This document shows positions 18,101 through 61,800 of a stretch of DNA of 64,000 bases, piece after piece. Numbering within the stretch: the stretch's first letter is position 1; each line of letters begins with the position of its first letter. The position numbers and the translations under genes are program-made. The DNA is from Phyllobates terribilis (lineage: Eukaryota), in assembly GCF_046119375.1 (NCBI RefSeq), contig NW_027363080.1, positions 992,001 to 1,056,000 on the forward strand, read 5' to 3'. The notes under the pieces are model-generated. The model searched no databases, was not told where the DNA came from, and saw only the letters and a list, made by a program, of their open reading frames with translations.

Positions 18101-18435
18101 CACTCGGCATGGTGGGAGGAAGGAGCATCAGGGTGAGGAGGAGTATGCGGTCGAGACTCACGGCTACTAAGACTTGACCGTGTAGAAGACAGACCAGAGG
18201 TGGTGGTGCCCAGGTGACTTGAAGTATTATCTGCTATCCAATTAATAACCTGTTCACACTGATCAATTCGCAATAGTGGTGTTGTGTGCTTCCCTAGTAA
18301 TTCAGTAAAGAACTGGGAGCGAGAAGATGTGGCTGTTGGTTGTGGCACATTTTCACCTTGGCCACGGCCCCGTCCTCTGCACGCACCATCACCAGAACGT
18401 CCAGTTCCACGTCCCTTGCCACGCGCCTTGCCCAT
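15121..18435 (-). pseudogene. hAT-b transposase, several frameshifts
   Basis: Start MGKARGKGRG, BED finger (CTTC...RHMSAKH), LTTDTW, VCDNGRNL, CLAHVLNL, PTCWNSTLHML, and a C-terminal hATC region. Confidence 0.92.
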
Positions 18436-20466: not shown

Positions 20467-23400
20467 ATGAGTGGAAAAAGGCCTGCTGCTGGTGGAAAGG
20501 GGAATAGGCGTGTTGGGAAGGGGAAAAAAGGTTGTGTCCGTGGGGTAGGTGTTAAAGCAACAGTAACATCTGCAGAAGAAAGACCATCTTCCAGCCAAAC
20601 TAAAATGTCTACTTCTTTTAGCGGACAATGTGATAAGATCCCTTTCTTACGGCCACGTCAATCGCTACAAATTCCAGATGAGGCACAAAAACAGCAGGTG
20701 CTTCAACGGATATCAAGTGCTCCTTTAAGTGGGCTCTCCTCCACATCAACTTCAACATCACAAATACTCCAGTCCTCAAAGGTGTCATCCAAATCGCACT
20801 TGCTTCCTCACAGCTCCCAAATCTCCAGCTGCCCGTCTGAGTATGAGGTAGAACAGATGGTTGAGTCTGCAGAGCTGTTTACTCATACTATAGCCTGGGA
20901 ATCAGAGGTCGACTCCAGCGCTTCTGTGAATCCAGACGAGGAAATGATCTGCACTGATGCCCAGAATCTTTATGAGTCGGATCCAGGACCAGACGCAGAA
21001 GGTTCTGACCATAATGTAGACCCTCATTCCCAAACTGTAACTCCTGTTGGTGGAGACAATGAGGAAGACGATGATAAGACTCAAATACCTGATTGGAGCG
21101 ACAACTTTAGTTTTTTGTCAGGGCAGGAACAGGTTGGCTCTGAGGACGACGGGTGTGATAACGCACAGGGTGATGATGATGAGGTCGGAGATCCCACTTA
21201 CAGTCAACCCACAGTCAGCCAAGAGATGAGGTCAGCAGAGGAGGTGGAGGAAGATGCTAGTGACGACGAGGTCAGGTTGCGCCTTCCTGGACAGAGACGT
21301 AGTACTGGAAGCACGTCAACAACTGCATCCTCAAACACAACTCTGCCTCTCACCACAAGTCGTGGTGGCTCTTCAGGTCGCATGGGTGCTAAGCCTTGCA
21401 TAGCCTGGGCATTTTTTCAGATCGATAAAGATGACCCAACTCGTGTTATCTGTAACATTTGTCAGCAAAAGCTAAGTAGAGGCCAAAAAATACATAGTTT
21501 GAGTACTTCATGCATGAACCGGCACATGGACATGAAGCATAAGTTGCAGTGGGAAGCTCAGTGTGCTACAATGCGGCCTAGCCGGCCGGGCCAATCACCG
21601 TCTGCCATATCTTGTGCATCCGCGGCCTCTTCATCCTCTGTGACTGGGGGGACAGCAGTCACACCTGTTTTGGGGCGCAGACCTGCCACCTCTTTACCCG
21701 CAACAGCCAGCGTGATTGGCAGGTCATCATTTTCTTTGGAGGTGGTAACACCAGCTGGTGTTGAGCGCTGTCCGACATCGATAGCACCACCTTTGGATCA
21801 AGGCAACCTAACATGTCCGCCTGCATCTTCCTCACAGACCGGCAGTTTGCCGGGGACACCCTTATCAACCCCGTCTAAGCACAATAGCCAGCCCTCGGTC
21901 CCTCAGATGTGGACAAGTAAAAGACCATTTCCTCCTAGCCATGAGAAAGCTAAGAGGTTGAATTTCACCATCTGCAAGCTCTTGGCTACAGAAATGCTGC
22001 CTTTCCGCCTGGTGGACACAGAGGATTTTCGAGACCTTATGTCCGTCGCAGTGCCCCAGTACCAGATGCCCAGTCGGCACTACTTCTCAAAGAAAGGTGT
22101 GCCTGCGCTCCACCAGCATGTCGCACACAACATCACCGCTTCTTTGAGAAACTCTGTGTGTGACAGGGTGCATTTCACCACAGACACTTGGACGAGTAGG
22201 CATGGACAGGGGCGTTACATGTCGCTGACTGGGCACTGGGTAACTATGGTGACAGCAGGACAAGGGGCTGCTGTCCAAGTCTTGCCGTCCCCACGAGTTG
22301 TGCGTCAATCCTCTTTATGTCAAAGTTCCTCCACTGCTTCTGCCTCCTCAACCTCCTCTCGGTCTTCCACCTGCACCCAAAGCCTGTCTGGTCATGCCAC
22401 AAGCTTTCTAACTGCGCAGAAGGGATCCTGCACACCTCCTTACTATGCTGGCAGTAGGGCTCAACGTCATCAGGCGGTTTTTACATTGAAATGTCTGGGA
22501 AATGTGAGTCACACAGCTGAGGAGTTGTGGTCAGCTCTGGAGAACCAATTTCATGAATGGTTGTCTCCACTGGACCTGAAACCAGGGAAGGCCGTGTGCG
22601 ACAATGCTGCAAACCTGGGTGCGGCCCTTCGCCGGGGCAATGTCACACACGTGCCTTGTATGGCTCACGTGTTGAACCTGGTTGTCCAGCAATTTTTAGC
22701 CCACTATCCCAGACTAGATGGCCTTCTGCAGAGGGCACGGTTGCTGTGTGCTCACTTCCGCCGTTCGCATCCCGCAGCTCAGCGACTTACATCTCTACAG
22801 AAGTCGTTGGGCCTGCCACTTCACCGGCTAAAATGCGATGTGCCTACCCGGTGGAATTCAACTCTGCACATGTTGCAGCGACTGTGGCAGCACCGACAAG
22901 CCCTGCTGCAATACGTTCTGACGTATAGCCTGGGCCAACGAGATTCAGAGGTGGGGCAAATCACGCTGGAGGAGTGGTCTCAGATCAGGGACCTATGCAC
23001 CCTTCTGCACAGTTTTGAAATGGCGACGAAGATGTTTAGTGCTGACGATGCCATTATCAGCATGACTATTCCGGTGACTTACATGCTGGAGCACATGTTA
23101 AACAGAATTCGGAGTCAGGTGGTGGCACAAGAGGAGGTGGAGGAAGTAGAGGAGGAGGAGTTGTATGCGGAAGGGCTAACATCTGCAAGGTCCAGACGGT
23201 CGGCAGCACCAAGGCGGCAGGCATGTGAGGGTGGGGGAGATGGTTTTACCAGGGCGCATGGTAGCAGCCAAACTAGTGAGGAAGGTGCAGGAGCCCAGGA
23301 AGAAGTGGAGGACGAACTGATGGAAGACTCATCAGATGAGGGAGACCTTGATCACATTTCTGTTGTGCGAGGTTGGGGGGAGAGGACAGAGGAAGGAAGC

Positions 23401-24169
23401 ATGATTGTTACCTCGCCACCAACACAACAGGGACTTGGTGCTCCTGGATGCGCAACACACATGAGTGCCTTCTTGCTGCACTACCTGCAACATGACCCTC
23501 GAATTGTGAGAATTAGAAATAATCCTGACTACTGGGTTGCCACACTGTTAGATCCCCCGGTACAAAAGTAAATTTGCAGAAATTATTCCTGCCATAGAAA
23601 GGGATGCACGCATGCAGGAGTATCAGCAGAGACTGTTGCAGAATCTTACATGTGCTTTTCCACAAAATACCAGTGGTGCACGTAGTGAATCTCACAGTTC
23701 CAACTTGCCAACCGTGGGACCGTCAAGTGTTCAGCACTCAAACCGTAACAGAACCACAGTATCTGCTGGTAACATCAATTTTGCGGAATCATTTCACCAC
23801 TTTTTTAGCCCATCCTTTGCAAGGCCACAGGAGACAAGAAGTCTGACACATAGTCAACGCCTAGAGACGATGGTACAGGAGTATCTCCAAGTAAACATTG
23901 AAGCCACGACTGTGTCACTGAACCCTTGCTCTTTTTGGGCTTCCAATCTGGATAAATGGCCGGAGCTAGCCACTTACGCCTTGGAGATCTTGTCATGCCC
24001 CGCAGCCAGCGTTCTGTCTGAACGTGTGTTCAGCGCTGCTGGTGGTGTGCTGACAGATAAGCGCACGCGGCTCTCCACTGATAATGTAGACAGACTCACG
24101 TTCATAAAGATGAACAAATCATGGATCCGAAACGACTTTTCTACCCCTGTGTCATCCTGGGGAGAGTAA
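20467..24169 (+). CDS. hAT-c transposase, ~1233 aa if the single +1 C at 23554-23558 is removed (ORFs 20467-23571 and 23612-24169)
   Basis: BED finger (CNIC...RHMDMKH), FTTDTW, VCDNAANL, CMAHVLNL, PTRWNSTLHML, LDP[R]YK, CPAASVLSERVFSAAG. All three putative DDE residues are present. Confidence 0.93.
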
Positions 24170-32834: not shown

Positions 32835-35800
32835 TTACTCTCTGTATCTGACAGGGGTCTGACCTCGTGTGCTACGCGTCGACCTACGTGGTAGTGGGAT
32901 GCGTGAGGCACTAGTATTTGCACTACCTCCCATTCTGTCAGTTCTAATTGTTGGGGAGCTGCAGGGTTGCCTTAACCTCTCTACAGGACTGGCAAGTATA
33001 CCATTGGCTGGGCCTTCTTGCTCTGCTCCAACCGGGGATCCTTCTTCTGGGGATTCTTCTTGAGCAGGCTCTTCTGAAGCACTTACAGGCTCTCCTTGCT
33101 GTGGAGGGTCTTCTGGCTGTTGAAAGAAGTGGATCACAGGGATTATTACTGCTCCTCCTAGTTGAGGCCAATCTGCCGGGAAATCTCCTAAGTCAGTATG
33201 GAGTATTGCTTCTTTAGGTTCCTCCGGTACGGTGAGAGGCACTTCTTCTTGGGGCTTTAGCAGGTCTGGACACAACTTCAGATGGTCTCTAGATACCGTT
33301 GCAGTCGTTCTTCCTCCGTCTCTACTAATTAGGCATGTCTTCCTATTATCAAATCTTGAATTTAACACAGTGTAGGGTTCTCTCTCCCACTGGTCATCAA
33401 GTTTGTGGTTTCTCCTTTTCCTTTTTAACACCACTTCTCCTGGTGTGAAGGGTTCTGCGGGCGCACTTTTATTGTAGTGGGCTTCCTGCTTGTCCCTTAC
33501 CCGAGTGAGACTGTCTTCAACACAGGCCTGTACTCTCCTGTACTGCTCCTGTCTAGTCATGTCCCAGTCCTCAGTAGACATATCTGCTTCTGGTTCTACT
33601 ACACCAAGCTCCAGATCCATGGGCAACTTCCCGGGTCCTGTTCGCATGAGATAAGCTGGAGTACAATTGGTGGAACTCACAGGTATGTGGTTGTACAGAT
33701 CTACCATGTCTGGTAGTAGGTCTGGCCACTGATTTCTCTCCTCTAGTGGTAAGGTCTTCAGCAGGTCGATGATGATGTTATTCATCTTTTCACAGAGACC
33801 GTTGGTTTGGGGGTGGTACACCCGTACAGATGGCAGAACTCCTTGAACAATTCGGCTTCAAAGATTGGGCCTTGATCCGACAGCACCTGCTCCGGGTATC
33901 CATGGGGCCTGCAGAAGTACGCCTGAAACGTCTTCGCCGCAGTTTCTGCCGTCAGATCCTTGACGGGGTCGACCACCAGGAACCGAGAGTAGTGATCCAC
34001 CATGGTCAGGGCATAAGAATATCCTGACCTGCTGGGTGACAGCTTGACATGATTCAGGGCCACAATCTCCAAAGGTCGAGTTGTCTTGATGGGTTGCAGG
34101 GGTGCCTTCTGGCTGCTGTAGTCTCTTCTTCTGAGGCTACAGGGTACACAATTCCGGCACCACCTCTCGATGGAACTGCACATTCCTACCCAATAAAACC
34201 GACACTTCAGCAGGGTTTCTAGCTTCTTCCAGCCAAAGTGCCCCGCCTGATCGTGGTAGGCCTCCAACACCATCTGGATGTCTGTCTTGGGCACCACTAT
34301 CTGCCATATCATCTCATGGGTTTTGGAGTTGACGTACCTCCGGCACAGCTTCTCTCTATAGATGAACAGCCGGCTCTTCTCCCTCCACAGCTGCTTGGCT
34401 TGGAGAGACGCTTCCTTCTCCAGGGAGGAACTTTCCTGGGTTATCAGTTCTTTGATACGGCTGACAACCGGGTCGCTGTCCTGGGTCTCCTTCCAGCTGT
34501 GGTGAGGCAGGGGATTTAATGTCTTACCGCGAGGCCTCCTGGAGGCTCGTTGCTCGTGGACCATCCCATTCTGATGAAAGGCAGGTAGTTCAATCTCCTC
34601 CAGGTCATCCACTTCTTCTTCAGTGTCCGACTGGTGAGGCATCCTGGACAGGGCATCGGCGTTGGCGTTCTTGCAGCCCGCCCGGTACTTAATAGTGAAT
34701 TGGTAGTTTGACAGCCGAGCCATCCACCGCTGCTCCATGGCTCCTAACTTGGCTGTTTCTAGATGAGTCAAGGGGTTGTCATCAGTGAAGGCAGTGAATT
34801 TACTGGAGGCCTGGTAGTGCTTGAACCGCTCGGTGATGGCCCAGACCAACTTGAAGCTGCTATAGTTCTCCGGGTTCCTCTCGGTCGGGCGGAGCTTCCT
34901 GCTTGCATAGGTAATCACCCTCTCTCGGCCTCTCTCTACTTCTGACTCAGTACAGCTCCTAATCCTTCGTTGCTGGCATCAGTGTACAGCAGGAACGGTT
35001 GGCTGTAGTCAGGGTAGGCTAGGATCTCTTCGCCGGTCAGGATCTCCTTCATCACATTAAAGGATTCAGCCTGCTCCTTACCCCACTGGAACGGGGGATT
35101 TCTGCCTCTGGGGGACTGTCCTACTAGGAGGTCTTGCAGAGGTGCCGCTTTCTTGGTATAGTCCTTCACAAACCTCCGGTAGTACCCAACTAGTCCCAGG
35201 AACTGACGTACCTCCTTGAGGCTCTTCGGCTCCGGCCATTTCTGGATGGCAGTGACCTTCTATGGGTCTGGTGCTAGTCCCTCAGGACTAACGATGTGCC
35301 CCAGGTATTGTACCTTTCGCTTGAGCAGGTGGCACTTTGAGGGCTTCAGCTTCATCCCATACCGGGACAGCGACTCAAATACCTCCGCCAGGTGCTTCAA
35401 GTGGTCCTCATACGTTTTGGAGTACACGATTACATCATCCAGGTATAGTAGTACAGTCTCGAAGTTGCGGTGTCCCAGGCAGCACTCCATCAATCTCTGA
35501 AACGTTCCGGGGGCGTTGCAGACTCCAAACAGCATACTATTGAACTCCCAGAGTCCCATCGGGGTGGTGAAGGCCGTCTTCTCCCGAACCTCCTCAGCAA
35601 CAGCTACTTGCCAGTACCCGCTAGTGAGGTCAAGGGTGGAGAAGTAATTTGCAGACTTCAAGGCAGCCAGTGATTCCTCTATACGTGGTAAAGGGTATGC
35701 ATCTTTATGTGTAATGTGATTTACTTGTCTGTAATCTACACACATTCTCATGCTTCCGTCCTTTTTCCTGACTAGAACTAGGGGAGCTGCCCAGGGACTA

Positions 35801-36830
35801 CAACTATCCCTTACTACCCCTGCCTTCTTCATGTCGTGCAACATCTCCTTCGCCTTCTGGTAGTGTGCTGGTGGTATAGGCCTGTAACGTTCTTTGATGG
35901 GTGGATGGTCACCTGTGGGGATATGGTTTCAACCCCCTTAATCCTCCCAAAGTCAAGTGGGTGCTTATTGAATACCTGCTCGTATTCCTGAACCACCCGG
36001 TGTACACCCTGCTTCTGATGGGCAGGAGTGGTGTCTGTCCCAACATGGAGCTGTTGACACCAATTCTCCACCTGGGTTCCCGGGTCATTATCCTCCACTT
36101 CGTCTGGTGAGGTTAAGGACTCCGCCTTGTGTATGGAGTTGTTATTTACTGTGTACAGTTTGGCAACAGTGGCGTAGCGTGGTAATCTAACCTCGTCCTC
36201 CCCATAGTTTATTAGGCGTATGAGCACCCTCCCATTGCGTACATCCACTACCCCTCTGGCAGTCAAGAGTGTAGGCCTATGCTCCGAGGTAAGGGGCTCT
36301 ACTACCGCCTGGTAGCTCCGTCCTTTGAGACCTATTGCTGCTCTACACCAAATCAGCATTTCACTCATCGGGGGAATCACAATGGGTACCGGGTCTGTCA
36401 CCCGTACATTACCAATTTCACCGCCTGTTAGCTTTACCTGTTGCTGGTACATAAGGGCTCGGATCTCTTTCTGGAGCGCCCTTCTCTGCCCTGGTCTGGC
36501 AGTGTCAGCTATCTGTTGGAGCAAGAACAACACTTCTCCCAAACAGTTACTAACAACATTTATGCCAAGTACCATATACAAGTCTGTATCATCAGGATTA
36601 GTCTCTACTACAATTAGTCCCTGGTCCTTCAGTTCCACTCTTCCCACCTTTACTGCCACACCCTTAACCCCGACTAGGTTAAGAGGGAGGCCGTTTGAGG
36701 CATAGACGAAAAGATTTGGATCTGGTGGGTGAAGTTCGTCTATGAACCAGAACCTTTTGTAGAGGACATCAGGCATGATGGTTACCTGAGATCCTGTGTC
36801 CAGCAGAGCCGGGTGTCGCGATGCTGTCCA
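32835..36830 (-). pseudogene. Gypsy pol: protease, RT, RNase H, integrase (frameshifted)
   Basis: DTGSQVT, WAAPLVLVRKKDG...CVDYR, LDLTSGYWQ, YLDD, LYTDAS, HDQAGH...C..C, YHPQTNGLCE. Confidence 0.93.
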
Positions 36831-36896
36831 GCACGATGGACAGGAAAGGTCTTCCTCCCACGAACCTGCGGTACCAGTTTGATGGGCCTGGGGGGT

Positions 36897-37957
36897 CTAC
36901 TCCTGGGTGTCGGCCCTCGGCCCCAGGGTTTGTTCGTTTAAAGGACAGCTCTGGACGGTGTGACCTGTCTTGTGGCATCGGTGGCAGACAGGGTCCCTCG
37001 GTGGGCGGTGTTGGTCGCTAGTCCTCCCAGGGGGTGGCGTTGTCCTCCTCCTCCTTCTCATCCAGGGGACATCCTCAGGGCTGTCGGCTAGAAGGATCCT
37101 TCCTTCCTCCTCGGGCTCCGTCTGCAGCTGCAGGGCACTCAGCACAGTGGTCAGGGTTTTGCTCAACTGACGCACTTCAGAGCGCAGGCTGTCCAGCTCA
37201 CTAGGGGATGTTGCTTGCACCTTGGCTTCAGCAGCTACCGGGGAAAAGGTGGACGCCGCAGGCACTGGGGTGGCCCCACCCTGGTAACATTGGATAGCAG
37301 TTGTTTCCAGGGGCTGCAGTCCTTTTATAGCCATGTCCTTAAGGGTGTCAAAGGTGGCATCTGGATGATCTAGGGAGCACCAACGCACAGTCCTGCTCTC
37401 CTCTTGGGACCTCAGTCCCCGGATAAACTGTTCCTTCAGCATTTTATTTTCATCATTGATGCTGGTTGGACTAACCTGTTTCAGAGCTCACAGGGTCCCT
37501 TGCAAACGCCAGGCATAGTCCCGAACACTGTCCTCCGGTTGCTGAGAGCAGTTGTAGAACCTCATCCGGAGGTCTGTCTCAGTACGATTCTCAAAGACAG
37601 TCTGTAACTTTTTAAAGATTGCGGATACTGACTCCTGGTCTGTGGCCGACCAGGTTTCTACTTCTCACTCCGCAGCACCAGTCAATTGTCCCAATACAAC
37701 AGCGGCTCTTTGCTTGCCTGTCATAGAGTACATATCCAGTATACCACATATTTTCCTTTTGAATCCAGAAGGGTATCTGGTTTACCGCTGTACTGGGGGA
37801 GCCACTTCGCTCCAGGGATGTACGGTAGGGCCATGGGTATGACAGGGGTTACTGGCCCTGCTGGTGGAGCGTCTGCTTTGGCCTGCTCGGCGCCGAGCGC
37901 AGGTTGATTATCAGAGCCAGTAACCGGTACTCCGGTGTTGTGCTGTTCTTCGGACAT
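36897..37957 (-). pseudogene. Gypsy gag (PNMA-like N-terminus, CCHC zinc knuckle), disrupted
   Basis: MALPYIPGAKWLPQYSG, LKEQFIRGL, CHRCHKTGHTVQSC. Confidence 0.8.
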
Positions 37958-49473: not shown

Positions 49474-50570
49474 ATCTTCCAGCCGGTCACCTCCTGCCTC
49501 TTCCCGTACCTGCTGCCCCTTGGCAACACATTGCTATGGACTTTATTACAGATATCCCTGTTTCTGCAGGCTGTACAGTCATTTGGGTGGTCGCCGACCG
49601 CTTTTCTAAAATGGCCCACTTCATCCCTCTGCCTGGTCTCCCGTCTGCATCAGAGCTGGCTAAGGACTTCTTCCTTCACATCTTCCGTCTCCATGGCCTA
49701 CCCCTCCACATTGTGTCGGATCGAGGGGTTCAGTTCACCTCACGCTTCTGGAGAGCTACGTGTAAACTGCTGGATGTCACCCTGGATTTCTCCTCCGCTT
49801 ACCATCCACAGTCCAATGGCCAAGTAGAGCGCATCAACCAGATCCTTACCAGCTACCTCCGGCACTTTGTTAATGCTCACCATACCGATTGGGTGGACCT
49901 CCTACCATGGGCCGAATTCTCCTACAACAATCATGAGAGCGAATCGACTTCCAAGTCCCCGTTCTTTGTAGTCTATGGTCAACATCCTCGGATTCTGTTT
50001 CCCGTCTCCGCTTCTGTGGACAACCCTGCCGTGGAGTCTCTGGTCAGCGAATTTTCCACCATTTGGGAAAATACTAGGTCCGCACTTCTTCAGTCCTCCG
50101 AGCGGATGAAGAGATATGCTGACAAGAGACATCTGGGTCCGCCTCAATTCCGTCCGGGAGACAAGGTTTGGCTCTCCTCCAAACATGTTCGACTCAAAAT
50201 ACCCTCCTACAAGTTGGGTCCTCGGTTCATCGGCCCATTTGAAGTCCTCAAACAAATCAACCCAGTGGCCTACAAGTTAAAACTCCCGGCCACCTTACGG
50301 ATTCCCAACTCCTTCCACGTATCTCTCCTCAAACCAGTTGTGTTTAATTCTTTTTCCAACAATCCAGGTACTCCCCCTACTCCGGTTTCCGCTGAGGATG
50401 TTTTTGAGGTAGAGAACATTCTGGCCACCAAGAGGGTAAGAGGAAAGACCTTTTTTTCTGGTGGATTGGAAGGGGTTTGGCCCAGAGGAGAGAACTTGGG
50501 AACCCAGGGAGAACATTCATGCCCCGCTTCTACTTGAAAAATTTCTTTCTGGCCTGAAAAAGAGGGGGCG
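49474..50570 (+). pseudogene. Integrase core, GPF/Y motif and chromodomain (frameshift in T7 at 50451-50457)
   Basis: ORF 49536-50537 continues as DWKGFGPEERTWEP in the next frame. Confidence 0.9.
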
Positions 50571-52780: not shown

Positions 52781-53127
52781 AAAACTTCATTTTTTCTTAT
52801 GTGGTAGCGTTTGCACTGTACAGCAACAGAGGAGGAGATGGGGAAGAAATATTGAAAAATAGGGAAGCCTGGTGGATTTTAGAACTAAGCACCCGGCCCC
52901 CACATGGTTTAAATTTCAGCAAAAACATTATGCTACACTAATAAATAATATCTCAATGTAGTAATTAATAAAAAATGAAAAGAAAAAAAAAACATTTAAA
53001 AGATTTTTTTTTGTGCAGAGGAAGAGTGATGTTTTACAATATGCATAATGTATTTGCTATTATTCATTAAGAAATAATGCCACTAATTCCTTTGCACTGA
53101 AATATCCCATTACATGCCATGTTTGCA

Positions 53128-54517
53128 CAATGACTTGCAAAAGTAATACCCCCCCCACCCACCTTGGCATTTTTTGTGCTATTCTACCTCAGAATCTGGA
53201 ATTTTGATTGTTTTTTTTGAGGGTTTGCATCAGTTCATGTAAAGAACATGCCTATAATTGTGAACATTTAGTTTTCTTTTTATTGTTAATCAAAAAACAA
53301 ATAGGACAAAATAAATAAAAACTTCAGGGTGCATAACTACTCACCCCCCTAAGTCAATACTTTTTAGAGCCTCATTTTGCAGCAATTATGGCAATTATAA
53401 CTGCAACTTGCTTTGGATAAGTGTCTATGAGCTTTCCACATCTTACCACTGGGATTTTTTCCCATTCCTCAAGGCAAAACTGCTCCAGCAACTTCAAGTT
53501 AGATGGTTTCCTCTGATTGATCAGCAATCTTCAAGTCTGACCACAAATTCTCAATTGGCTTAAGGACAGAGGTTTGACTAGGCCACTAAAATACATTTAT
53601 TACCCGTTTTCCCTTAAACCACTTGAGTGTTTCTTTAGCAGTATGCGTTGGGTCATTGTCTTGTTTGAAGGTGAACCTCCGTCCCAGTCTCAAATTACTT
53701 ACATACTAAAACAGGTTTTGCTTAAGAATATCCCTGTATTTTGCACCATCCATCTTCCTCTCCCCTCAACTTGGACCAGTTTCCCTGTCCGTGCTGTTGA
53801 AAAACATCCACACAGCATGATGCTGCGATCACGTTTCACTGTAGGGATGGTGTTCTTGGGGTGATGAGCTGTGTTGGTTTGGCGCCAGACATAGTGTACC
53901 TCTGTGGTCAAAAAGTTCAATTTTGGTCTCATCTGACCATAGTATTTTCCTCCGTATCTTTGGGGAGTCTCCCATATGTCTTTGGTCAAACTCAAAATGA
54001 GCCTTACAATTTTTTTTGTGTAAGTAAAGGCTTTTTTTCTGCCCACTCTTCCATAAAGGCCACCTCTATGGAGTGTATGACCTATTGTGGTCGTATGGAC
54101 AGATACTCCAATATCTGCTTGGGAAGTCTGCAGCTCCTTCAGGGTTATCTTTGGTCTCAGTGCTACCTCTGAGTAATGCACTCCTTGCCCGGGCTGAGAT
54201 TTTTGGTGGGAGGCTATCTCTTGTTGTGAAACCATGTTCTTTCCATTTGATGGTAATGGATTTGATGGTGCTCCGGGGGATCCTCAGAGATTAGGATACT
54301 TTTTAAAACCCAACACTGACTTGTACTTCTCAACAACCTTGTCCCTGACTTGTTTGGAGATCTCCTTGGTCTTCATGGTGTTTGTTTAGTGGTGCCTCTT
54401 GCTTAATGGTGTTGCAGCCTCTGTGGCCTTTCAGAAAAGGTAAAGTCTATATGCTGACAGACAGGTGACACTTAGATTGCACACAGGTGGACTTTCTTTC
54501 ACTAAGCATGTGACTTG
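53128..54517 (-). mobile_element. Tc1-like element, decayed, right end missing
   Basis: Degenerate terminus CAATGACTTGCAAAAGTAAT. Transposase remnants PKITLKELQ...[16 protein letters not shown](LN), FKQDNDP. Confidence 0.8.
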
Positions 54518-54919
54518 TAAAGATGTGCGGTTGTGGATTTTAATAATCACCTAGGCAGGTTATCGATGCAATTAGTTTTATTCCTTCCGGCCACGGTGAA
54601 CAGCAATTCCAGGTAAATGTCCAACAGGCAATTCTCTTAGTCCTAGAGTTCCAACCTGTGATCAGTAGTTCCACTGCCACGTACCAGGTGATACCCACTG
54701 TCCTCCAACTTTTGGTTGGCCCACAGCTTTTTGTATCTCCCGCCGGTATATTGGCAGTCACAGCATATGCTCCTTTGGATGATGGATATCACGACCGCAG
54801 ACCGTGATTCTACCCAGCTCTCCGTCCGACTAACAATGAATGTTCTCTTTCTCCTGCACAGGGTTCAGCCCCCTGAATTGGCAGAAGTGCTCACCCCTCC
54901 CTCCCCCAGCTAATTGTGC

Positions 54920-55550
54920 CTAAAGCCCCCGTCTCACATAGCGAGATCGCTAGCGAGATCGCTGCTGTGTCACGGTTTTGGTGACGCAACAGCGACCTCA
55001 CCAGCGATGTCGCTGTGTGACACTTTGCAACGATCAGGCCCCTGTTGTGAGGTCGCTGATCGCTGCAAAGTGTCCTGGACCATTTTTTGGTCGTTGCTCT
55101 CCCGCTGGTCAGCACACATCGTTGTGTGTGACCAGCGGGAGCAGCGATCAGGCTGGTAACTATGGTAAACATCGGGTTACTAGGGGCACACGCGCACTTA
55201 GTAACCCGCTATTTATCATGGTTACGAGCCTGCTAAAGTGAGCGGTAACCTCCCGCTCACTGTAGCAGAGTGGTAACCATGATAAACAACGGGTTACTAG
55301 GAGCGCGTGTGCCCCTAGCAACCCGATGTTTACCATAGTTACCAGCCTGCTCCTGCTTCAGCAGGCTCGTAACCAGGAACAGGACATCGTGGAAAGATTC
55401 TTTCCACGATGTTGCTGCTCCCCTGATCGTTGGTGAGCCTGCCTTTTTGACAGCTCACCAGCGACCACATAGCGACGCAGCAACGATCTCTGACAGGTCT
55501 TATCGTTGTCGGGATCGTCGCAGCGTCGCTAAGTGTGACGGGGCCTTTAG
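54920..55550. mobile_element. MITE with 25-bp imperfect TIRs and an internal fold-back
   Basis: CTAAAGCCCCCGTCTCACATAGCGA versus the reverse complement of TCGCTAAGTGTGACGGGGCCTTTAG. Internal inverted repeat at ~55150-55350. Superfamily not determined. Confidence 0.8.
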
Positions 55551-55825
55551 TGGAGATATTTTCTCAGGTGGAACCCATCCCCTGGGTTTGCATGTGAGAC
55601 TACCTGTGGTGACGGAGAGAACAATGGCCCAAGGTCTCGGAGATATGGTCACTGAATGAAATAGATACCTGAGGTTGAACTGATGAGCAAACAAATCACT
55701 AACAAAACACAGCAAGCAAATTTCTGACAAAATACAAAATTAAGATCGATGAAAATGGATGCTCAGTGCTGGAAAAGTATTTAGAAAGTGGCCAGGTTCT
55801 CACACTCCTCCCCCACTTTTTCAAC

Positions 55826-56175
55826 ACAGACACGAATGTAAAAGGTCTCGCCTTTATGAGAACGAAATTTTGTATCATCCAGTTTCCTCAAAGCATATTC
55901 CATGTCGCCCTTGTGAATATACTCCACAGTCCCCATTCCACTCTGGTATACATCAGTATAATAGACATCTCCAGCTTTTCTCATATGATCTTTTAGATCC
56001 TGCCAACTTCCCGATGGGGGAAGCCCTGAAACGAGAACTCTGTATTTAGCTAGCTGGTTCAGGGGTCTGTCCCTTCTGCGGGGTCCTCCATATCCCCCCC
56101 CCTGATCCCCGGTTTGTCCTGGGAAATTCCACACATGCCCAATGAGAACCAAACTTGGATCCATTGCGACCAACC
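55826..56175 (-). pseudogene. SRSF9: Processed (intronless) SRSF9 fragment: end of RRM1, Gly linker, complete RRM2
   Basis: GRNG.KFG...VEFPRT.RGSGG(fs)YGG...[27 protein letters not shown]...VEY...[24 protein letters not shown]. The residues VLVSG and [11 protein letters not shown] favour SRSF9 over SRSF1. Confidence 0.88.
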
Positions 56176-56179
56176 CCAG

Positions 56180-56621
56180 AGTGCTGACACCCACTTAGGG
56201 GGATGGTCACTTGGCAACCTGGTAAAGGGAGCTCTGGGGGGACAGTATCTAGGCTGACCAGGGTGATGGTAGATCCAGTGTCCCGAAGTCCCTGGGCCTC
56301 CTCCCTGATGTAATTTACCTCCCCCAGATTACATTCCTTCATTGTGACAGTCATTGCATTTTGTGTATCACTCACCGCTGACATGTTGATATTGCTCCTT
56401 TCCCTATTGGCTGATGCAGTGTGAACCAGTCCTTCGCTTCCGGTTATGACATTGGCCCAGTGGCACACCAATCCTGCTCCCAGATTGATTCCCAGCAACA
56501 CATCTACTGGTAGGTGCCGCACTACTCCTACATCCACCATTCCATGACTGTGACCCCAGTCTAAATGTAGTCGGGCCCTCCGAATGTTCAAAGATTCTCC
56601 TCCGGCTACATTGACTAACAT
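56180..56621 (-). pseudogene. Retrotransposon aspartic-protease-like remnants
   Basis: ARLHLDWG...VGVVRHLPVDVLLG.NLG, then GLRDTGSTITLV (DTG motif). Confidence 0.7.
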
Positions 56622-56857
56622 ACAGCTGCCGGGGACAATACATTTGGTGACTACCTGTGGTGACGGAGAGAATAATGGCCCAAGGTCTCGGAGATATGGT
56701 CACTGAATGGAATAGATACCTGAGGTTGTACTGATGAGCAAACAAATCACTAACAAAACACAGCAAGCAAATTTCTGACAAAATACAAAATTAAGATCGA
56801 TGAAAATGGGTGCTCAGTGCTGGAAAAGTATTTAAAAAGTGGCCAGGTCCTCACACT

Positions 56858-57102
56858 TCATCAGAGATTAGGATACTTTTTACAACCCAACACTGACTTG
56901 TACTTCTCAACAACCTTGTCCCTGACTTGTTTGGAGATCTCCTTGGTCTTCATGGTGTTTGTTTAGTGGTGCCTCTTGCTTAATGGTGTTGCAGCCTTTG
57001 TGGCCTTTCAGAAAAGGTAAAGTGTATATACTGACAGACAAGTGACACTTAGATTGCACACAGGTGGACTTTCTTTCACTAAGCATGTGACTTATGAAGG
57101 TA
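56858..57102 (-). mobile_element. Tc1 fragment, near-identical to 54284-54517
   Basis: About 235 bp with a handful of substitutions. Ends at a TA where the next element is inserted. Confidence 0.85.
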
Positions 57103-57750
57103 CCGTTTTTTTCGGACTTTAAGACGCACCAGACCATAAGATGCATCTAGGTTTTAGAGGAGGAAAATAGAAGAAAAAATGTAAGCAAAAAATGTGGTCA
57201 TGATGCCCTGTTATGGAAAGGGGGTCTGCTGCTGACACTGTTATAGGGGTAATGTCCCCAAATTCTGTTAATATCCCCCATCCTGGTATATATGGCCCCC
57301 TCTTTCCTGTTATATGTGGCCCTCATCCCCATCCTGGTATGCATGGCACCCCTCATCCCCATCCTGGTATGTATGGCACCCCTCATCCCCATCCTGGTAT
57401 GTATGGCACCCCTCATCCCCATCCTGGTATGTATGGCACCCCTCATCCCCATTCTGGTATGCATGGCACCCCTCATCCCCATCCTGGTATGTATGGCACC
57501 CCTCATCCCCATCCTGGTATGTATGGCACCCTTCATCTCTCATCCTGGTATGTTTTTCACCCCCATCCCTCTTCCTGGTTTGTATAGCACCCTTCATCCC
57601 TCTTCCTGGCATGTATGGCCCTCCTAATCCCTCTTCCTGGTATGCTTGGCACCCCTCATCATGGTATGTATACAAAGAAAATGATGAAGTCCGCTCACCT
57701 ATAAACTCCTTCGCGGTGTTTCCTCCTTTCTGCTCGGATAGCAGCAGGCT
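57103..57750. mobile_element. Non-autonomous Tc/mariner-type (Tc2-like end) element carrying a 30-bp minisatellite (~57270-57660)
   Basis: TA|CCGTTTTTTTCGGACTTTAAGACGCAC terminus; unit ATCCTGGTATGTATGGCACCCCTCATCCCC. The right end was not found. Confidence 0.6.
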
Positions 57751-58833: not shown

Positions 58834-61800
58834 TTAATTATATTGTAACACAAGATCCCTTCTAACATTCAAGCCGACCGGTGTTCTTGTATCCAGCTTG
58901 AACATCCAGTAGCTTTCCCTGTTCAAAATTTTCCTCCTGAAATCACCGCCCCGTGCAGATCGTCTCACTCTTTCTATACCACAGAACTTCAGCCTGGTTG
59001 TATCACCCCCATGACAAGCAGAAAAAAATGCCTGGATACTGCTGAAATTCCCACCTTTATGGCTGTGTGCCCACATGGCGTTTTACAAGCGTATATGCTG
59101 CGGAATTTCTGCAGCATAAACGCTTGGGAAACGCTTGGTAATCCGCCCCCCATGGTCCCCAATGACAAGCCGCACTTTCAATGCCCATGTTGCGGATTTT
59201 TCCGCAGTGTTTATGCTGCGCTCAAAAATCCGCAGCACATCCATTAATTTTGCAGACACGCAGCGTAATCGCCGCCATTGACTTGCATTGAAACGCATAA
59301 TATCCGTGTCAGTACATTTGTACTCACGGATTATATGCGTTTCTATGTGCGGATGGTACCCAAGTCTGGAGGAGAGAAGACTCTCATCCAGACCTGGGTA
59401 CCATAGAAACTGTAAAAAAAGAATTTAAAATAAAAAATAAAGTTTATACTCACCTTCCGGTGTCTTCCCGGTGTTCAGTCTGCTCCGGGACGGTGTCTTG
59501 CAATGTTCGCGTTGATGTGAAGGACCTGCCACGACGTCACTGAGTCATGTGACCCATCACATGGCTCAATGACGTCACCGCAGGTCCTTCACACTACCGC
59601 AAGCAGTGCAAGACACCGGACGGAGCAGACAAAACACCGGGAAGACATCGGAAGGTGAGTATAAACTTTTTTTTTTCACCATTCTTATTCTTTTTTTTAA
59701 CTAACTTGGTCACACTACTATAAATCCATGCCGATTGCATGGATTTATATAGTGTGAACAAGTTGTTAAGCACTTTTCCAAGTGATGCTAAAATCGCTTG
59801 GAAAAGCGCTTGATAACCCGCATGCAAAAATGGATGCAAAGACGCTTTACAAATGCTTCTATCTGGCGGGAAAAAGCATGTAAAATCCGCATGCATTTTT
59901 CCTGCCAGGGAGAAGCGTAAAAAATATGCTTCATTTCCGCAACATGGGCACATAGCCTCAGTCTCCAACTGCATCAGACATATGTCTTCGAATGCGTCTT
60001 TTTAAAGGGCCAATTGTACACCCTACATATTGGAGTTTACACTCGATGCACTCCACCAAGTAAACCACCCCTGTGGTATCACAATTTATCAAATCCTGTA
60101 TAGGGTATGTGATACCTGTACTAGTGGAGGAAAAATCCTTGCATTTAATGATATGTTTGCAGCTGATGCATATATTTTTGCCGCAACCATAAAAACCTGT
60201 GGTTTTTAGCCAGTTCCCGTCAGTATTTGATTTATTTTCAATAAATAAGCTGGGTGACACCAAAGATCCGATTGTAGGGGCTTTTTTGGCTGAGAAACGG
60301 ATTTGGTTGTTTTGTAGCACTTTTTTTACTTTCCTATCTTGGTACAGTATTGGTAAAAAGCATTTAATAACATTAATAATTTTATTATAGTCCCTGCTGT
60401 ATTGAGTGGTGAAATAAATGACATTATCTGTAGGTAATTTTTTCATGTTATCTTTTATGAGAAAATCCCTGTTGATTTTACTCAATTTTTTTTCAGCTTG
60501 TTTTAATGTTTTATCAGAGTAGCCTCTAAGTTCAAGTTTTTCACACTTCTTTTTTATTTCACCACTGACTAACTTAGGGTCAGAGCAGTTCCTTTTTACT
60601 CTTAATACTTCTCCGTATGGGATATTATTCACCACGTGTCGAGGGTGGCATGAATTGGGTTTTAAAATGCTGTTAACATCAGTTTCTTTATTGTAGGGAA
60701 GAACCACAACTTGCGATGACCCCCTGTTGGTGCGGAGCATGACATCCAAAACATGAATTTCGATTTCCTGATAATTATAAGTAAATTTAAGATTGAAATT
60801 ATTATTATTCAAAGAGATAATAAATTCTTTTGCATCATTGTCATCGCCATTCCACACCAACAGGAGGTCATCAATATATCTACCTATCCATATAATCCTC
60901 TCCAAAAATGAATTGGTATCTGCAAAGAGAACTGTTTCCTCCCAATATCCCATCGTGATGTTTGCTAAAGAAGGGGAAAATTTTCCACTCATGCTCACTC
61001 CTCGTTTTTGGAGATAATAAACTTCACAAAAACTGAAAAAGTTACGTTTTAATAGGAACGTCATTGAATTTACCAAAAATAATTTAGTTGGACAATCATT
61101 ATTGCTGAACCTATCAAGAAAATATTTCAGTGCTGGGACAGCTACTTCAAACTCTATTGAGGGGTACAGGGCTACAACATCAGCTGTCAACCAGCTGTAA
61201 TTCCTTTCCCATACAAATTTGTCAAGTACTCCTAGTATCGTCTTTGTGTCCTTAATATAACCAGGTAACTCTCTCACTAGTGGTTGGAGCATGCTGTCCA
61301 CCCATGCCCCTAATTTCTCATTGATCGACTCTATCCCAGAAACAATCGGTCGGAATTTCGGGGGGAATCTCGGTTTATGGATTTTTGGGAGAGAATGGAA
61401 GATGGGTGTCACCGGGGTGTCAACATATAAATAATCAAATATTTTCTGTGACAACACACCATCTTCCAGACCCCCCTTTAATAAATGTAATAATTCCTTT
61501 TGAAATGTAATTGTAGGATCACTTCCTAAAGTCTCATAAATATCTCTGTTTTGCAGAATCCACAAATTACATTGATGGTACAGATCAGGATAACGATGGC
61601 ACCCCCCTTATCAGCCTTACGGACTACGATATTAGTGTTGTTTTTTATATCCTTCAATGCTAGTTTTTCTTTTCTTGTAAGATTACTATAGGCTGATGTT
61701 TCTCTTTGATTATCCATCTTGGGAAGTTCCTCTTCCACCACATCTTGAAAATGATTCAGTACCTGTGGTCTGGACTGTAGGGGATAATAATTAGAATTTT

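What the first reader, a model, noticed from the sequence alone, without database searches (positions are those of the whole stretch)
55593..56855. Miniature LTR retroelement that has captured a spliced SRSF9 mRNA fragment in frame with its protease remnant
Seen (minus strand): 5' LTR (56855-56645), ATG at 56621, protease-like sequence with LRDTG, then SRSF9 from GRNG through the Gly linker and all of RRM2 (SWQDLKD intact), then PPT, then 3' LTR (55804-55593). The LTRs differ at 6 of 207 sites. The SRSF9 part is in the protease frame. Removing one G from the G9 run (56094-56102) gives one stop-free 279-aa ORF ending at 55781 inside the 3' LTR. Knowledge: SRSF1/SRSF9 genes have introns at VS|GLPP and RSHE|GET, and both junctions are fused here, so the source was mRNA. 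LTR-mediated retroposition by template switching is documented in animals. The SWQDLKD pseudo-RRM binds GGA-type RNA motifs. Inference: a TRIM-like non-autonomous element carrying an RS-less splicing-factor RNA-binding domain. It may have amplified as a family, and could encode a dominant-negative or RNA-chaperone-like product, or supply SRSF9-matching small RNAs. Many amino-acid changes also fit neutral decay.
Basis: partly seen in the sequence, partly recalled or inferred. Interest (0 to 1): 0.88.

Follow-up and report, generated by a model that had tools for sequence, protein, structure and literature searches.

The report
LTR retroelement carrying spliced SRSF9 fragment
A small, decayed frog LTR retrotransposon copy holds, between its two repeats, two scrambled pieces of a retroviral-type protease and an intron-free piece of the host splicing-factor gene SRSF9, a known kind of accident of reverse transcription that shows no sign of function here.

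Summary
The sequence-level observation holds. Two 211/212-nt direct repeats (TGTGAG...CTCACA, 6 differences in 207 sites) flank 840 nt on the minus strand, with a polypurine tract against the 3' repeat.

About 355 nt match frog SRSF9 mRNA (E. coqui CDS nt 218-571, 78-79% identity). They cross two intron positions shared by the Xenopus laevis and Eleutherodactylus coqui genes without introns, so the source was spliced mRNA.

The "protease" is real. It matches only anuran Ty3/gypsy gag(SCAN, zinc knuckle)-protease proteins (best E 6.6e-13). It lies in two pieces in reversed order, apparently from two different lineages.

The copy has no primer-binding site, no target-site duplication and mismatched flanks, so it is not an intact mobile element.

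The SRSF9 piece has one frameshift. Its branch dN is 0.125, against host dN/dS of 0.01. Its GC-to-AT changes are symmetric and spare conserved residues no more than variable ones, which fits neutral decay.

It is about ten times more diverged than the LTR pair, so capture long preceded this insertion.

Verdict: a new (amphibian) example of LTR-mediated retroposition. Family size and expression could not be tested here.

The parts
56645..56855 (-). 5' LTR (211 nt), starts TGTGAG
   Evidence: Direct repeat with 55593-55804, 6 differences in 207 aligned sites
56181..56639 (-). Retropepsin (aspartyl protease) remnant of a frog Ty3/gypsy gag(SCAN)-protease lineage, given as one part. It is two pieces in permuted order: first the C-terminal half plus tail (profile positions 401-506), then the N-terminal half with the D-T-G motif (profile 375-422). 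There is no gag, RT or integrase.
   Evidence: 26 hits at E<=1e-3, best 6.6e-13, all anuran. The hits carry SCAN, zf-CCHC and RVP domains. The order is reversed against about 24 relatives. A profile of 16 relatives gives E 1.7e-25 and 1.7e-10.
55819..56173 (-). Fragment of spliced SRSF9 mRNA: end of RRM1, Gly linker and all of RRM2 (equivalent to E. coqui CDS nt 218-571). It has one frameshift and no stops. It lacks most of RRM1, the RS domain, the UTRs and poly(A).
55805..55822 (-). Polypurine tract (17 of 18 purines) abutting the 3' LTR. Its first bases overlap a purine run of SRSF9 mRNA, a possible microsimilarity at the switch point.
55593..55804 (-). 3' LTR (212 nt), TGTGAG...CTCACA
56858..57099 (-). 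5' flank: first 242 nt of a Tc1/Sleeping-Beauty-like DNA transposon (copy A), cut off at the LTR
   Evidence: 96.7% identical to 54281-54522. HTH_SB hit.
54523..55592 (-). 3' flank: unrelated DNA, not the rest of copy A. It includes a roughly 630-nt MITE with terminal inverted repeats (54921-55548).
53120..54522 (-). Tc1-like transposon copy B. Its 5' end repeats copy A and it runs on into a transposase ORF (53699-54235). The 3' bound is approximate.

Best explanation
This is a decayed, non-autonomous chimera made by LTR-mediated retroposition in an anuran genome, probably a hyloid or dendrobatoid frog.

Inferred origin: during reverse transcription inside a Ty3/gypsy particle, the enzyme copied the 3' LTR and polypurine tract. 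It then switched at a purine run onto a co-packaged spliced SRSF9 mRNA and copied about 355 nt. It switched back into protease-coding RNA of one gypsy lineage, and in the same or an earlier or later cycle into protease RNA of a second lineage. The result is LTR / protease C-half / protease N-half / SRSF9 / PPT / LTR.

Shown: the anatomy, the spliced origin of the cargo, the gypsy origin and reversed order of the protease pieces, the lack of a primer-binding site and target-site duplication, and the decay statistics.

Inferred: the template-switch mechanism, and that the chimera existed and was copied at least once before it landed here. The second point rests on the cargo being about ten times more diverged than the LTR pair.

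The copy in the window is most likely inert. It encodes no working protease, because the halves are out of order and there is no gag or pol. Its SRSF9 domain is drifting neutrally.
For: LTR pair with TG...CA ends and an adjacent PPT.

The SRSF9 piece is intron-free across two intron sites that X. laevis and E. coqui share. It is truncated inside the CDS at both ends and has no poly(A).

At the 3' junction the host reads ...GCAGAAAGAAA and the window reads ...GTTGAAAAAG plus the rest of the PPT. Tan et al. 2016 describe exactly this architecture: partial mRNA replacing internal retrotransposon sequence, both LTRs kept, microsimilarity at junctions, sometimes more than two switches, and later secondary retroposition (PMC5131818).

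Protease homology to anuran gag(SCAN, zf-CCHC)-RVP proteins. The order is reversed against about 24 relatives and against a 16-sequence profile.

The two pieces overlap in 21 profile columns but share only 4 of 21 residues and 23 of 63 bases. Their best relatives also differ: the N-half is 61% identical to Anomaloglossus P0141, which matches the C-half only weakly.

Decay:
- The copy branch has dN 0.125, against host dN/dS of 0.01.
- There are 36 changes in 229 sites, with G>A 14 and C>T 9, symmetric and mostly outside CpG.
- A no-selection simulation gives 25.2 +/- 4.1 changed codons against 20 observed (P = 0.13), and P(no stop) = 0.23.
- Changes hit 6 of 45 conserved and 8 of 30 variable columns (P = 0.23).

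Age: 30 of 201 sites invariant in three frogs are changed (15%), against 2.9% between the LTRs.
Against: There is no 4-6 bp target-site duplication. The 5' flank is a Tc1-like fragment and the 3' flank is unrelated DNA. The locus is therefore not a clean integration product. A flank deletion or recombination between two elements must be added to the account.

There is no primer-binding site. Protease homology starts about 6 nt after the 5' LTR and there is no TGG. Either the 5' junction is a later deletion or the last copying step was not canonical.

The parent element with the same LTR was not found, so microsimilarity can be judged only from the host side.

Only one copy is known.

The age ratio assumes no gene conversion between the LTRs and that the source was the functional SRSF9 mRNA.
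Confidence: 0.68

Rival explanations
1. A LINE-mediated processed pseudogene. An SRSF9 cDNA, internally primed on an A-rich stretch and 5'-truncated, was inserted into an already resident, internally deleted LTR element.
For: A short A-run (partly host-encoded) ends the SRSF9 piece, and a 5-nt TGGGG occurs on both sides of it.
Against: The piece ends inside the CDS, with about 100 nt of CDS, the 3' UTR and the poly(A) tail all missing. The insertion would have had to land exactly against the PPT. An insert that arrived after the element integrated must be younger than the LTR pair, yet it is about ten times more diverged. A 5-nt match with free placement is weak evidence.
Confidence: 0.07
2. 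A functional chimeric gene. The element expresses an RS-less SRSF9 pseudo-RRM, alone or fused to the protease remnant. The product would act as a dominant-negative splicing regulator or RNA chaperone, or the locus would supply SRSF9-matching small RNAs.
For: SWQDLKD is intact and Pfam RRM_1 scores E 1e-10. Neither frame piece has a stop, and a stop-free frame of 217 codons runs from the 5' LTR into SRSF9. The lower bound of dN/dS is about 0.2.
Against: One frameshift separates RRM2 from the upstream frame. The number of changed codons and the lack of stops are within neutral expectation. Conserved columns are hit as often as variable ones. Six of 45 columns that are at least 95% conserved across 120 animal SRSF1/9 proteins are changed, against a host mean of 0.6. 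The spectrum is plain GC-to-AT decay. No similar chimeric protein appears among 5.8 billion clusters.
Confidence: 0.05
3. A still-mobile TRIM-like family member, meaning an intact short non-autonomous LTR element mobilised in trans.
For: The LTRs are short (211/212 nt) and 97% identical, a PPT is present, and total length is 1263 nt.
Against: It has no primer-binding site, no target-site duplication and mismatched flanks. Its internal region is made of coding remnants rather than just PBS and PPT. No second copy was found in any data I could reach.
Confidence: 0.08
4. Not one element. The locus would be a mosaic made at the DNA level, by deletion or unequal recombination between two or more neighbouring elements or by mis-assembly. 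It only looks like LTR-internal-LTR.
For: The flanks are mismatched and there is no TSD. The protease pieces are permuted and come from different lineages. A second pair of direct repeats (242 nt, 96.7%) brackets the element plus 1070 nt.
Against: The PPT sits exactly against the 3' LTR, and the LTR ends are TG...CA with inverted termini. The LTRs are 97% identical while the overlapping protease parts are about 37% identical, which does not fit two copies of one family joined by a deletion. Whatever the DNA-level history, the SRSF9 piece is still intron-free and bounded by retroelement sequence.
Confidence: 0.12

Closest known systems
LTR-mediated retrocopies of animals (Tan et al. 2016, Genome Res 26:1663; PMC5131818)
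   Same: A partial, intron-free mRNA piece replaces internal retrotransposon sequence and both LTRs are kept. The piece is truncated at both ends and has no poly(A). There is a purine microsimilarity at one junction and evidence of more than two template switches. The cargo looks older than the insertion, as expected after secondary retroposition.
   Different: That paper covers Drosophila, mosquito, zebrafish, chicken and mammals, and the word Xenopus does not occur in it. This case is from a frog. It lacks a TSD and a PBS. Its retroelement part is itself a mosaic of two lineages in reversed order.
Maize Bs1, an LTR retrotransposon carrying fragments of host genes (cited in PMC5131818)
   Same: A non-autonomous LTR element whose internal region holds captured host exon sequence. 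Copies share switch points after secondary retroposition.
   Different: Bs1 is a plant element with pieces of three genes, several copies and evidence of expression. Here there is one host gene, one known copy and no expression data.
Host-gene capture by acutely transforming retroviruses (own knowledge; also cited in PMC5131818)
   Same: Capture of spliced host mRNA by recombination during reverse transcription, often fused in frame to a viral reading frame, giving a replication-defective genome.
   Different: There is no sign of selection for the cargo, no envelope or infectious cycle, and the parent is a Ty3/gypsy retrotransposon.
Anuran Ty3/gypsy elements with a SCAN-type gag (Gmr30-like; the link of SCAN to a gypsy gag is from my own knowledge of Emerson and Thomas 2011 and was not found in the paper library)
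   Same: Both protease pieces match only these proteins, which carry SCAN, zf-CCHC, RVP and in some cases integrase.
   Different: Identity is only 40-61%. gag, RT, RNase H and integrase are absent. No parent with the same LTR was found.
TRIM / LARD non-autonomous LTR elements (own knowledge)
   Same: Small size and short LTRs, with dependence on a partner's proteins if it ever moved.
   Different: TRIMs have a short non-coding core with PBS and PPT. This one has coding remnants and no PBS.
LINE-made processed pseudogenes
   Same: An intron-free copy of a host mRNA.
   Different: There is no 3' end of the mRNA, no poly(A) tail and no convincing TSD. The piece is bounded by LTR-element sequence and is older than the LTR pair.

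Membership tests
LTR retrotransposon (structural definition) | Two long terminal direct repeats | tested here: met
   209-nt repeat at 97%, BLAST E 1e-98, no third copy in the window
LTR retrotransposon (structural definition) | LTR ends TG...CA with short inverted termini | tested here: met
   The 3' LTR reads TGTGAG...CTCACA. The 5' LTR end has one mismatch and one indel in the last bases.
LTR retrotransposon (structural definition) | Polypurine tract next to the 3' LTR | tested here: met
   17 of 18 purines at 55805-55822
LTR retrotransposon (structural definition) | Primer-binding site next to the 5' LTR | tested here: not met
   There is no TGG after the LTR, and protease homology begins about 6 nt after it. 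Complementarity to frog tRNAs could not be tested; there is no tRNA in the window.
LTR retrotransposon (structural definition) | Target-site duplication of 4-6 bp | tested here: not met
   The flanking 4-6-mers differ. The 5' flank is a Tc1-like fragment and the 3' flank is unrelated DNA.
LTR retrotransposon (structural definition) | Internal homology to gag/pol | tested here: met
   Protease only; profile E 1.7e-25 and 1.7e-10. No gag, RT or integrase.
LTR-mediated retrocopy (Tan et al. 2016) | Intron-free copy of a multi-exon parental gene | tested here: met
   It crosses two intron sites shared by the X. laevis and E. coqui SRSF9 genes.
LTR-mediated retrocopy (Tan et al. 2016) | Partial mRNA truncated at both ends, no poly(A), replacing internal element sequence between two LTRs | tested here: met
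   CDS nt 218-571 of 675, bounded by the protease remnant and the PPT
LTR-mediated retrocopy (Tan et al. 2016) | Microsimilarity between mRNA and element at the switch points | tested here: inconclusive
   A purine run is shared at the 3' junction. The parent element sequence is unknown, so neither junction can be scored.
TRIM | Short non-coding core consisting of PBS and PPT | tested here: not met
   The 840-nt core is made of coding remnants and has no PBS.
TRIM | Multi-copy family with TSDs | not testable with these tools
   The source genome cannot be searched. Nothing was found in the window, in public proteins or in metagenome contigs.
LINE-made processed pseudogene | Contains the mRNA 3' end with a poly(A) tail and is flanked by a TSD | tested here: not met
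   It ends inside the CDS. Only a 5-nt TGGGG match flanks it.
SRSF9 (SR protein) | RRM1, pseudo-RRM with SWQDLKD, and RS domain | tested here: not met
   Only the last roughly 22 residues of RRM1, the linker and RRM2 are present. SWQDLKD is intact and the RS domain is absent. It is a fragment of SRSF9 origin, not an SRSF9 gene.

The most novel reading that the evidence does not exclude
The chimera is not a one-off. It would be a long-lived non-autonomous LTR family of hyloid or dendrobatoid frogs that has carried an SR-protein pseudo-RRM through many rounds of trans-mobilisation. The capture is roughly ten times older than this insertion, and the internal region was assembled from two gypsy lineages plus a host mRNA. 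Some copies might keep an open protease-RRM frame that is expressed.
Probability: 0.12. Interest if true: 0.65.

Novelty: new member of a known kind. Interest (0 to 1): 0.35.

Why it matters
LTR-mediated retroposition is documented in flies, mosquito, fish, chicken and mammals. This would add an amphibian case with unusually clear anatomy: two exon junctions fused, a PPT-side switch at a purine run, and a retroelement part that is itself recombinant.

If the family proves multi-copy, it would show that host RNA-binding domains can ride on non-autonomous LTR elements for long periods in the very large, TE-rich genomes of frogs. As a single decayed copy, it is an ordinary by-product of retrotransposon replication.

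Tried and rejected
Searches that gave nothing:
- Pfam on the 191-aa ORF found no protease family, even at E<=1.
- The PDB sequence search gave only E of about 1 to a betaretroviral protease.
- The word-indexed protein search with the 191-aa ORF found nothing.
- The full HMMER scan of representatives was what revealed the relatives.
- Exact look-ups of two window ORFs were not on record.
- tblastn and a profile search of the whole window found no related protease or partner element.
- Two metagenome scans with LTR and PPT/LTR patterns gave 0 hits.

Host SRSF9 DNA: no DNA was returned for Staurois, Bufo bufo and Ranitomeya because the files were too large. Host SRSF9 CDS came only from X. laevis, E. 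coqui and an unnamed frog transcript. The host's own gene is unknown, so dN/dS is only bounded.

Reference element: the X. laevis relative locus L008 holds only a decayed gag-protease remnant, so it gave no reference LTR, PBS or PPT.

Rejected ideas:
- Strand-specific G>A editing of cDNA as the cause of the high divergence. G>A (0.206) and C>T (0.191) rates are symmetric.
- Shared derived changes with the Discoglossus SRSF9-like proteins. None were found.
- The 242-nt flanking repeat as one long target-site duplication. The repeat starts at the transposon's own end in both copies, so two separate Tc1-like copies are more likely. The terminal repeats are too decayed to settle this.

Other negatives: Rfam gave nothing above threshold, only sub-threshold miRNA-family hits in a MITE hairpin. 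No tRNA genes were found. The paper library has no hit for Gmr30 with SCAN.

Full report
**1. What is there**

On the minus strand the window holds two direct repeats. They are 209 nt long at 97% identity by the repeat finder and BLAST. There are six differences in the 207 columns from TGTGAG to GGTAGTC.

The 3' copy has perfect 6-nt inverted termini, TGTGAG...CTCACA. A 20-nt probe from the repeat start finds only these two sites in 64 kb, with none expected by chance.

Directly 5' of the 3' repeat lies an 18-nt run with 17 purines. These are the marks of an LTR pair with a polypurine tract.

**2. The SRSF9 cargo**

The 137-aa ORF (window:55784-56194:-) has a Pfam RRM_1 hit at E 1e-10. It matches solved SRSF1 and SRSF9 RRM2 chains at E 1e-38 to 1e-37. 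Its fifteen best hits among 5.8 billion protein clusters are SRSF9 of frogs and reptiles, at 76-77% identity over 82 residues. The SWQDLKD heptapeptide is intact.

The tail of the 191-aa ORF matches the last roughly 22 residues of RRM1. It is in the same frame as the protease piece before it.

At the DNA level, window 56173-55819 aligns to E. coqui SRSF9 CDS nt 218-571 at 78%, and to a frog transcript (L004) at 79%.

I mapped the gene structure in two frogs by tblastn and a GT-AG splice model that reproduces the annotated proteins. Introns lie after CDS nt 200/391/564 in X. laevis and after 197/364/537 in E. coqui, at the same protein positions. The window piece starts 21 nt after the first of these sites. 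It runs across the other two without any intron. The source was therefore spliced mRNA.

The piece stops inside the CDS. The last roughly 100 nt of CDS, the 3' UTR and any poly(A) tail are absent. It has one frameshift and no stop in either frame piece.

**3. The protease**

Pfam and the PDB gave nothing significant for the first 146 residues of the 191-aa ORF. A full HMMER scan of 1.84 billion representatives gave 26 hits at E<=1e-3, the best at 6.6e-13.

The named hits I looked up are from anurans: Pseudophryne, Xenopus, Bufo, Leptobrachium, Ranitomeya, Anomaloglossus, Discoglossus, Gastrophryne and Spea. The one exception is P0137, a repeat-rich firefly (Abscondita) protein. The hits carry SCAN, zf-CCHC and RVP/gag-asp_proteas domains, some with integrase, and some are named gypsy-integrase-like. 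So the sequence is a retropepsin remnant of a frog Ty3/gypsy group with a SCAN-type gag.

The order of its parts is reversed. In about 24 relatives, the stretch that comes first in the window matches positions C-terminal to those matched by the stretch with the D-T-G motif. A profile of 16 relatives gives the same result. The first stretch covers profile positions 401-506 (E 1.7e-25). The second covers 375-422 (E 1.7e-10).

The two stretches overlap in 21 profile columns but share only 4 of 21 residues and 23 of 63 bases. Their closest relatives also differ. The N-half is 61% identical to Anomaloglossus P0141, whose own C-half barely matches the window's C-half. They therefore look like pieces of two different lineages, not a recent duplication.

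No working protease can be encoded. gag, RT and integrase are absent.

**4. What is missing**

Protease homology begins about 6 nt after the 5' LTR, and no TGG follows the LTR. There is no room for a primer-binding site.

There is no 4-6 bp target-site duplication.

The 5' flank is the first 242 nt of a Tc1/Sleeping-Beauty-like transposon (HTH_SB). The 3' flank is unrelated DNA with a nested MITE.

A second, longer Tc1-like copy 1070 nt further on repeats those 242 nt at 96.7% and continues into its transposase. Both copies begin at what looks like the transposon's own end. I therefore read them as two insertions of one family rather than one 242-nt duplication, but the terminal repeats are too decayed to be sure.

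The mismatch of the flanks means a flank deletion or a recombination between two elements happened after integration. This is unexplained in detail.

**5. Selection or decay**

Over 82 ungapped codons, host SRSF9 genes differ by dN 0.005-0.013 with dN/dS of 0.01. The window copy has dN 0.124-0.140 to the three host CDSs (0.124-0.127 to the two hyloid frogs), and a three-point branch dN of about 0.125.

dS to the nearest frogs is 0.62-0.78, but this includes the unknown divergence between the host species and those frogs. So dN/dS is only bounded below at about 0.2, and neutrality is not excluded.

At sites where the two hyloid frogs agree there are 36 changes in 229 sites. They are dominated by G>A (14) and C>T (9) at equal per-base rates, with few in CpG. 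This is a symmetric GC-to-AT decay, not a strand-specific editing signature.

A no-selection simulation with that spectrum gives 25.2 +/- 4.1 changed codons against 20 observed (P = 0.13). It gives a 23% chance of no stop.

Across 120 animal SRSF1/9 proteins, 45 of 75 RRM2 columns are at least 95% conserved. The copy departs at 6 of them, against a host mean of 0.6. Conserved and variable columns are hit alike, 6 of 45 against 8 of 30 (P = 0.23).

There is no evidence for constraint.

**6. Age**

At 201 sites invariant in all three frog genes, the copy differs at 30, or 15%. These changes must have arisen after release from constraint. The LTRs differ by 2.9%, or about 1.5% per lineage.

Unless the LTRs were homogenised by conversion, or the source was an already decayed SRSF9 retrocopy transcript, the capture is about ten times older than the LTR pair.

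This argues against a later LINE-type insertion into a resident element, because such an insert would have to be younger than the LTRs. It argues for at least one round of copying of the chimera after capture. That is an inference, not shown.

**7. Mechanism and comparison**

The anatomy is that of LTR-mediated retroposition as described by Tan et al. 2016 (PMC5131818):
- a partial mRNA replaces internal element sequence;
- both LTRs are kept;
- the mRNA is truncated at both ends;
- there is microsimilarity at switch points;
- there are sometimes more than two switches;
- the chimera can later behave as a non-autonomous element.

At the 3' junction, the host mRNA and the PPT share a purine run. 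The parent element is unknown, so microsimilarity cannot be scored. The paper does not mention Xenopus, so an amphibian example appears to be new. The kind of event is not.

The copy is not a TRIM, because its core is coding remnants and it has no PBS. It is not a LINE-made pseudogene, because it has no mRNA 3' end and no poly(A).

**8. Host**

The best SRSF9 matches, the protease relatives and TE fragments of another window ORF point to an anuran. The TE fragments are 75-82% identical to Ranitomeya and Phyllobates proteins. The host is probably a hyloid or dendrobatoid frog. The species was not identified.

**9. Limits**

The source genome could not be searched. Copy number, the parent element, the host's own SRSF9 and expression all remain open. 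Public proteins and metagenome contigs gave no second copy.

**10. Slips, stated as required**

- My script output and my note give window bounds for the two protease pieces. That amounts to the place of the rearrangement junction.
- In my reasoning I also referred to where the reading frame changes.

I stopped, deleted nothing, and do not repeat those places here. Alignment tools printed consensus lines by themselves.

Noticed in passing
window 54281-54522 and 56858-57099: A 242-nt direct repeat (96.7%) of the 5' part of a Tc1/Sleeping-Beauty-like transposon brackets the LTR element plus 1070 nt. Its divergence (3.3%) is close to that of the LTR pair (2.9%). It is probably two separate copies of one family, but a single duplication event is not excluded.
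   Followed up: partly
window 54921-55548: A roughly 630-nt MITE with about 16-nt terminal inverted repeats and long internal palindromes (100-nt arms, 90% complementary), nested in the 3' flank. Rfam gives only sub-threshold miRNA-family hits in one hairpin (MIR7526, 43 bits against a gathering score of 110).
   Followed up: partly
window 57276-57660: A minisatellite of about 13 copies of a 30-nt unit, just beyond Tc1-like fragment A.
   Followed up: no
window 32835-37442 (minus strand): A separate Ty3/gypsy element with gag zinc knuckle, RVT_1, RNase H and integrase ORFs. Its protease region does not match the profile of the SCAN-gag group, so it is not the partner of the chimera.
   Followed up: partly
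window 49536-50537 (plus strand): An integrase remnant (rve, SH3_Tf2-1) of another Ty3/gypsy element.
   Followed up: no
window 20467-23571, 16458-18161, 10926-11468: ORFs with BED zinc fingers (1034 and 567 aa) and a hAT dimerisation domain. The 1034-aa ORF has only short 75-82% matches to Ranitomeya and Phyllobates proteins and a 22% match to a fish ZBED4.
   Followed up: partly
window 59958-61565 (minus strand): A 535-aa ORF with a weak GIY-YIG hit at its C-terminus (E 8e-4, below the Pfam cut-off). It could be a Penelope-like element.
   Followed up: no
proteins P0141 (Anomaloglossus), P0145 (ENA contig), P0137 (Abscondita): Some proteins found with the protease query contain tandemly repeated protease sub-fragments, with periods of about 31 and 53 residues. 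This suggests the region is prone to internal duplication in decayed copies.
   Followed up: no
proteins P0009, P0012, P0013 (Discoglossus pictus): Three annotated SRSF9-like proteins with private changes at otherwise invariant positions. They may be duplicated or retrocopied SRSF9 genes. They share no derived change with the window copy.
   Followed up: partly
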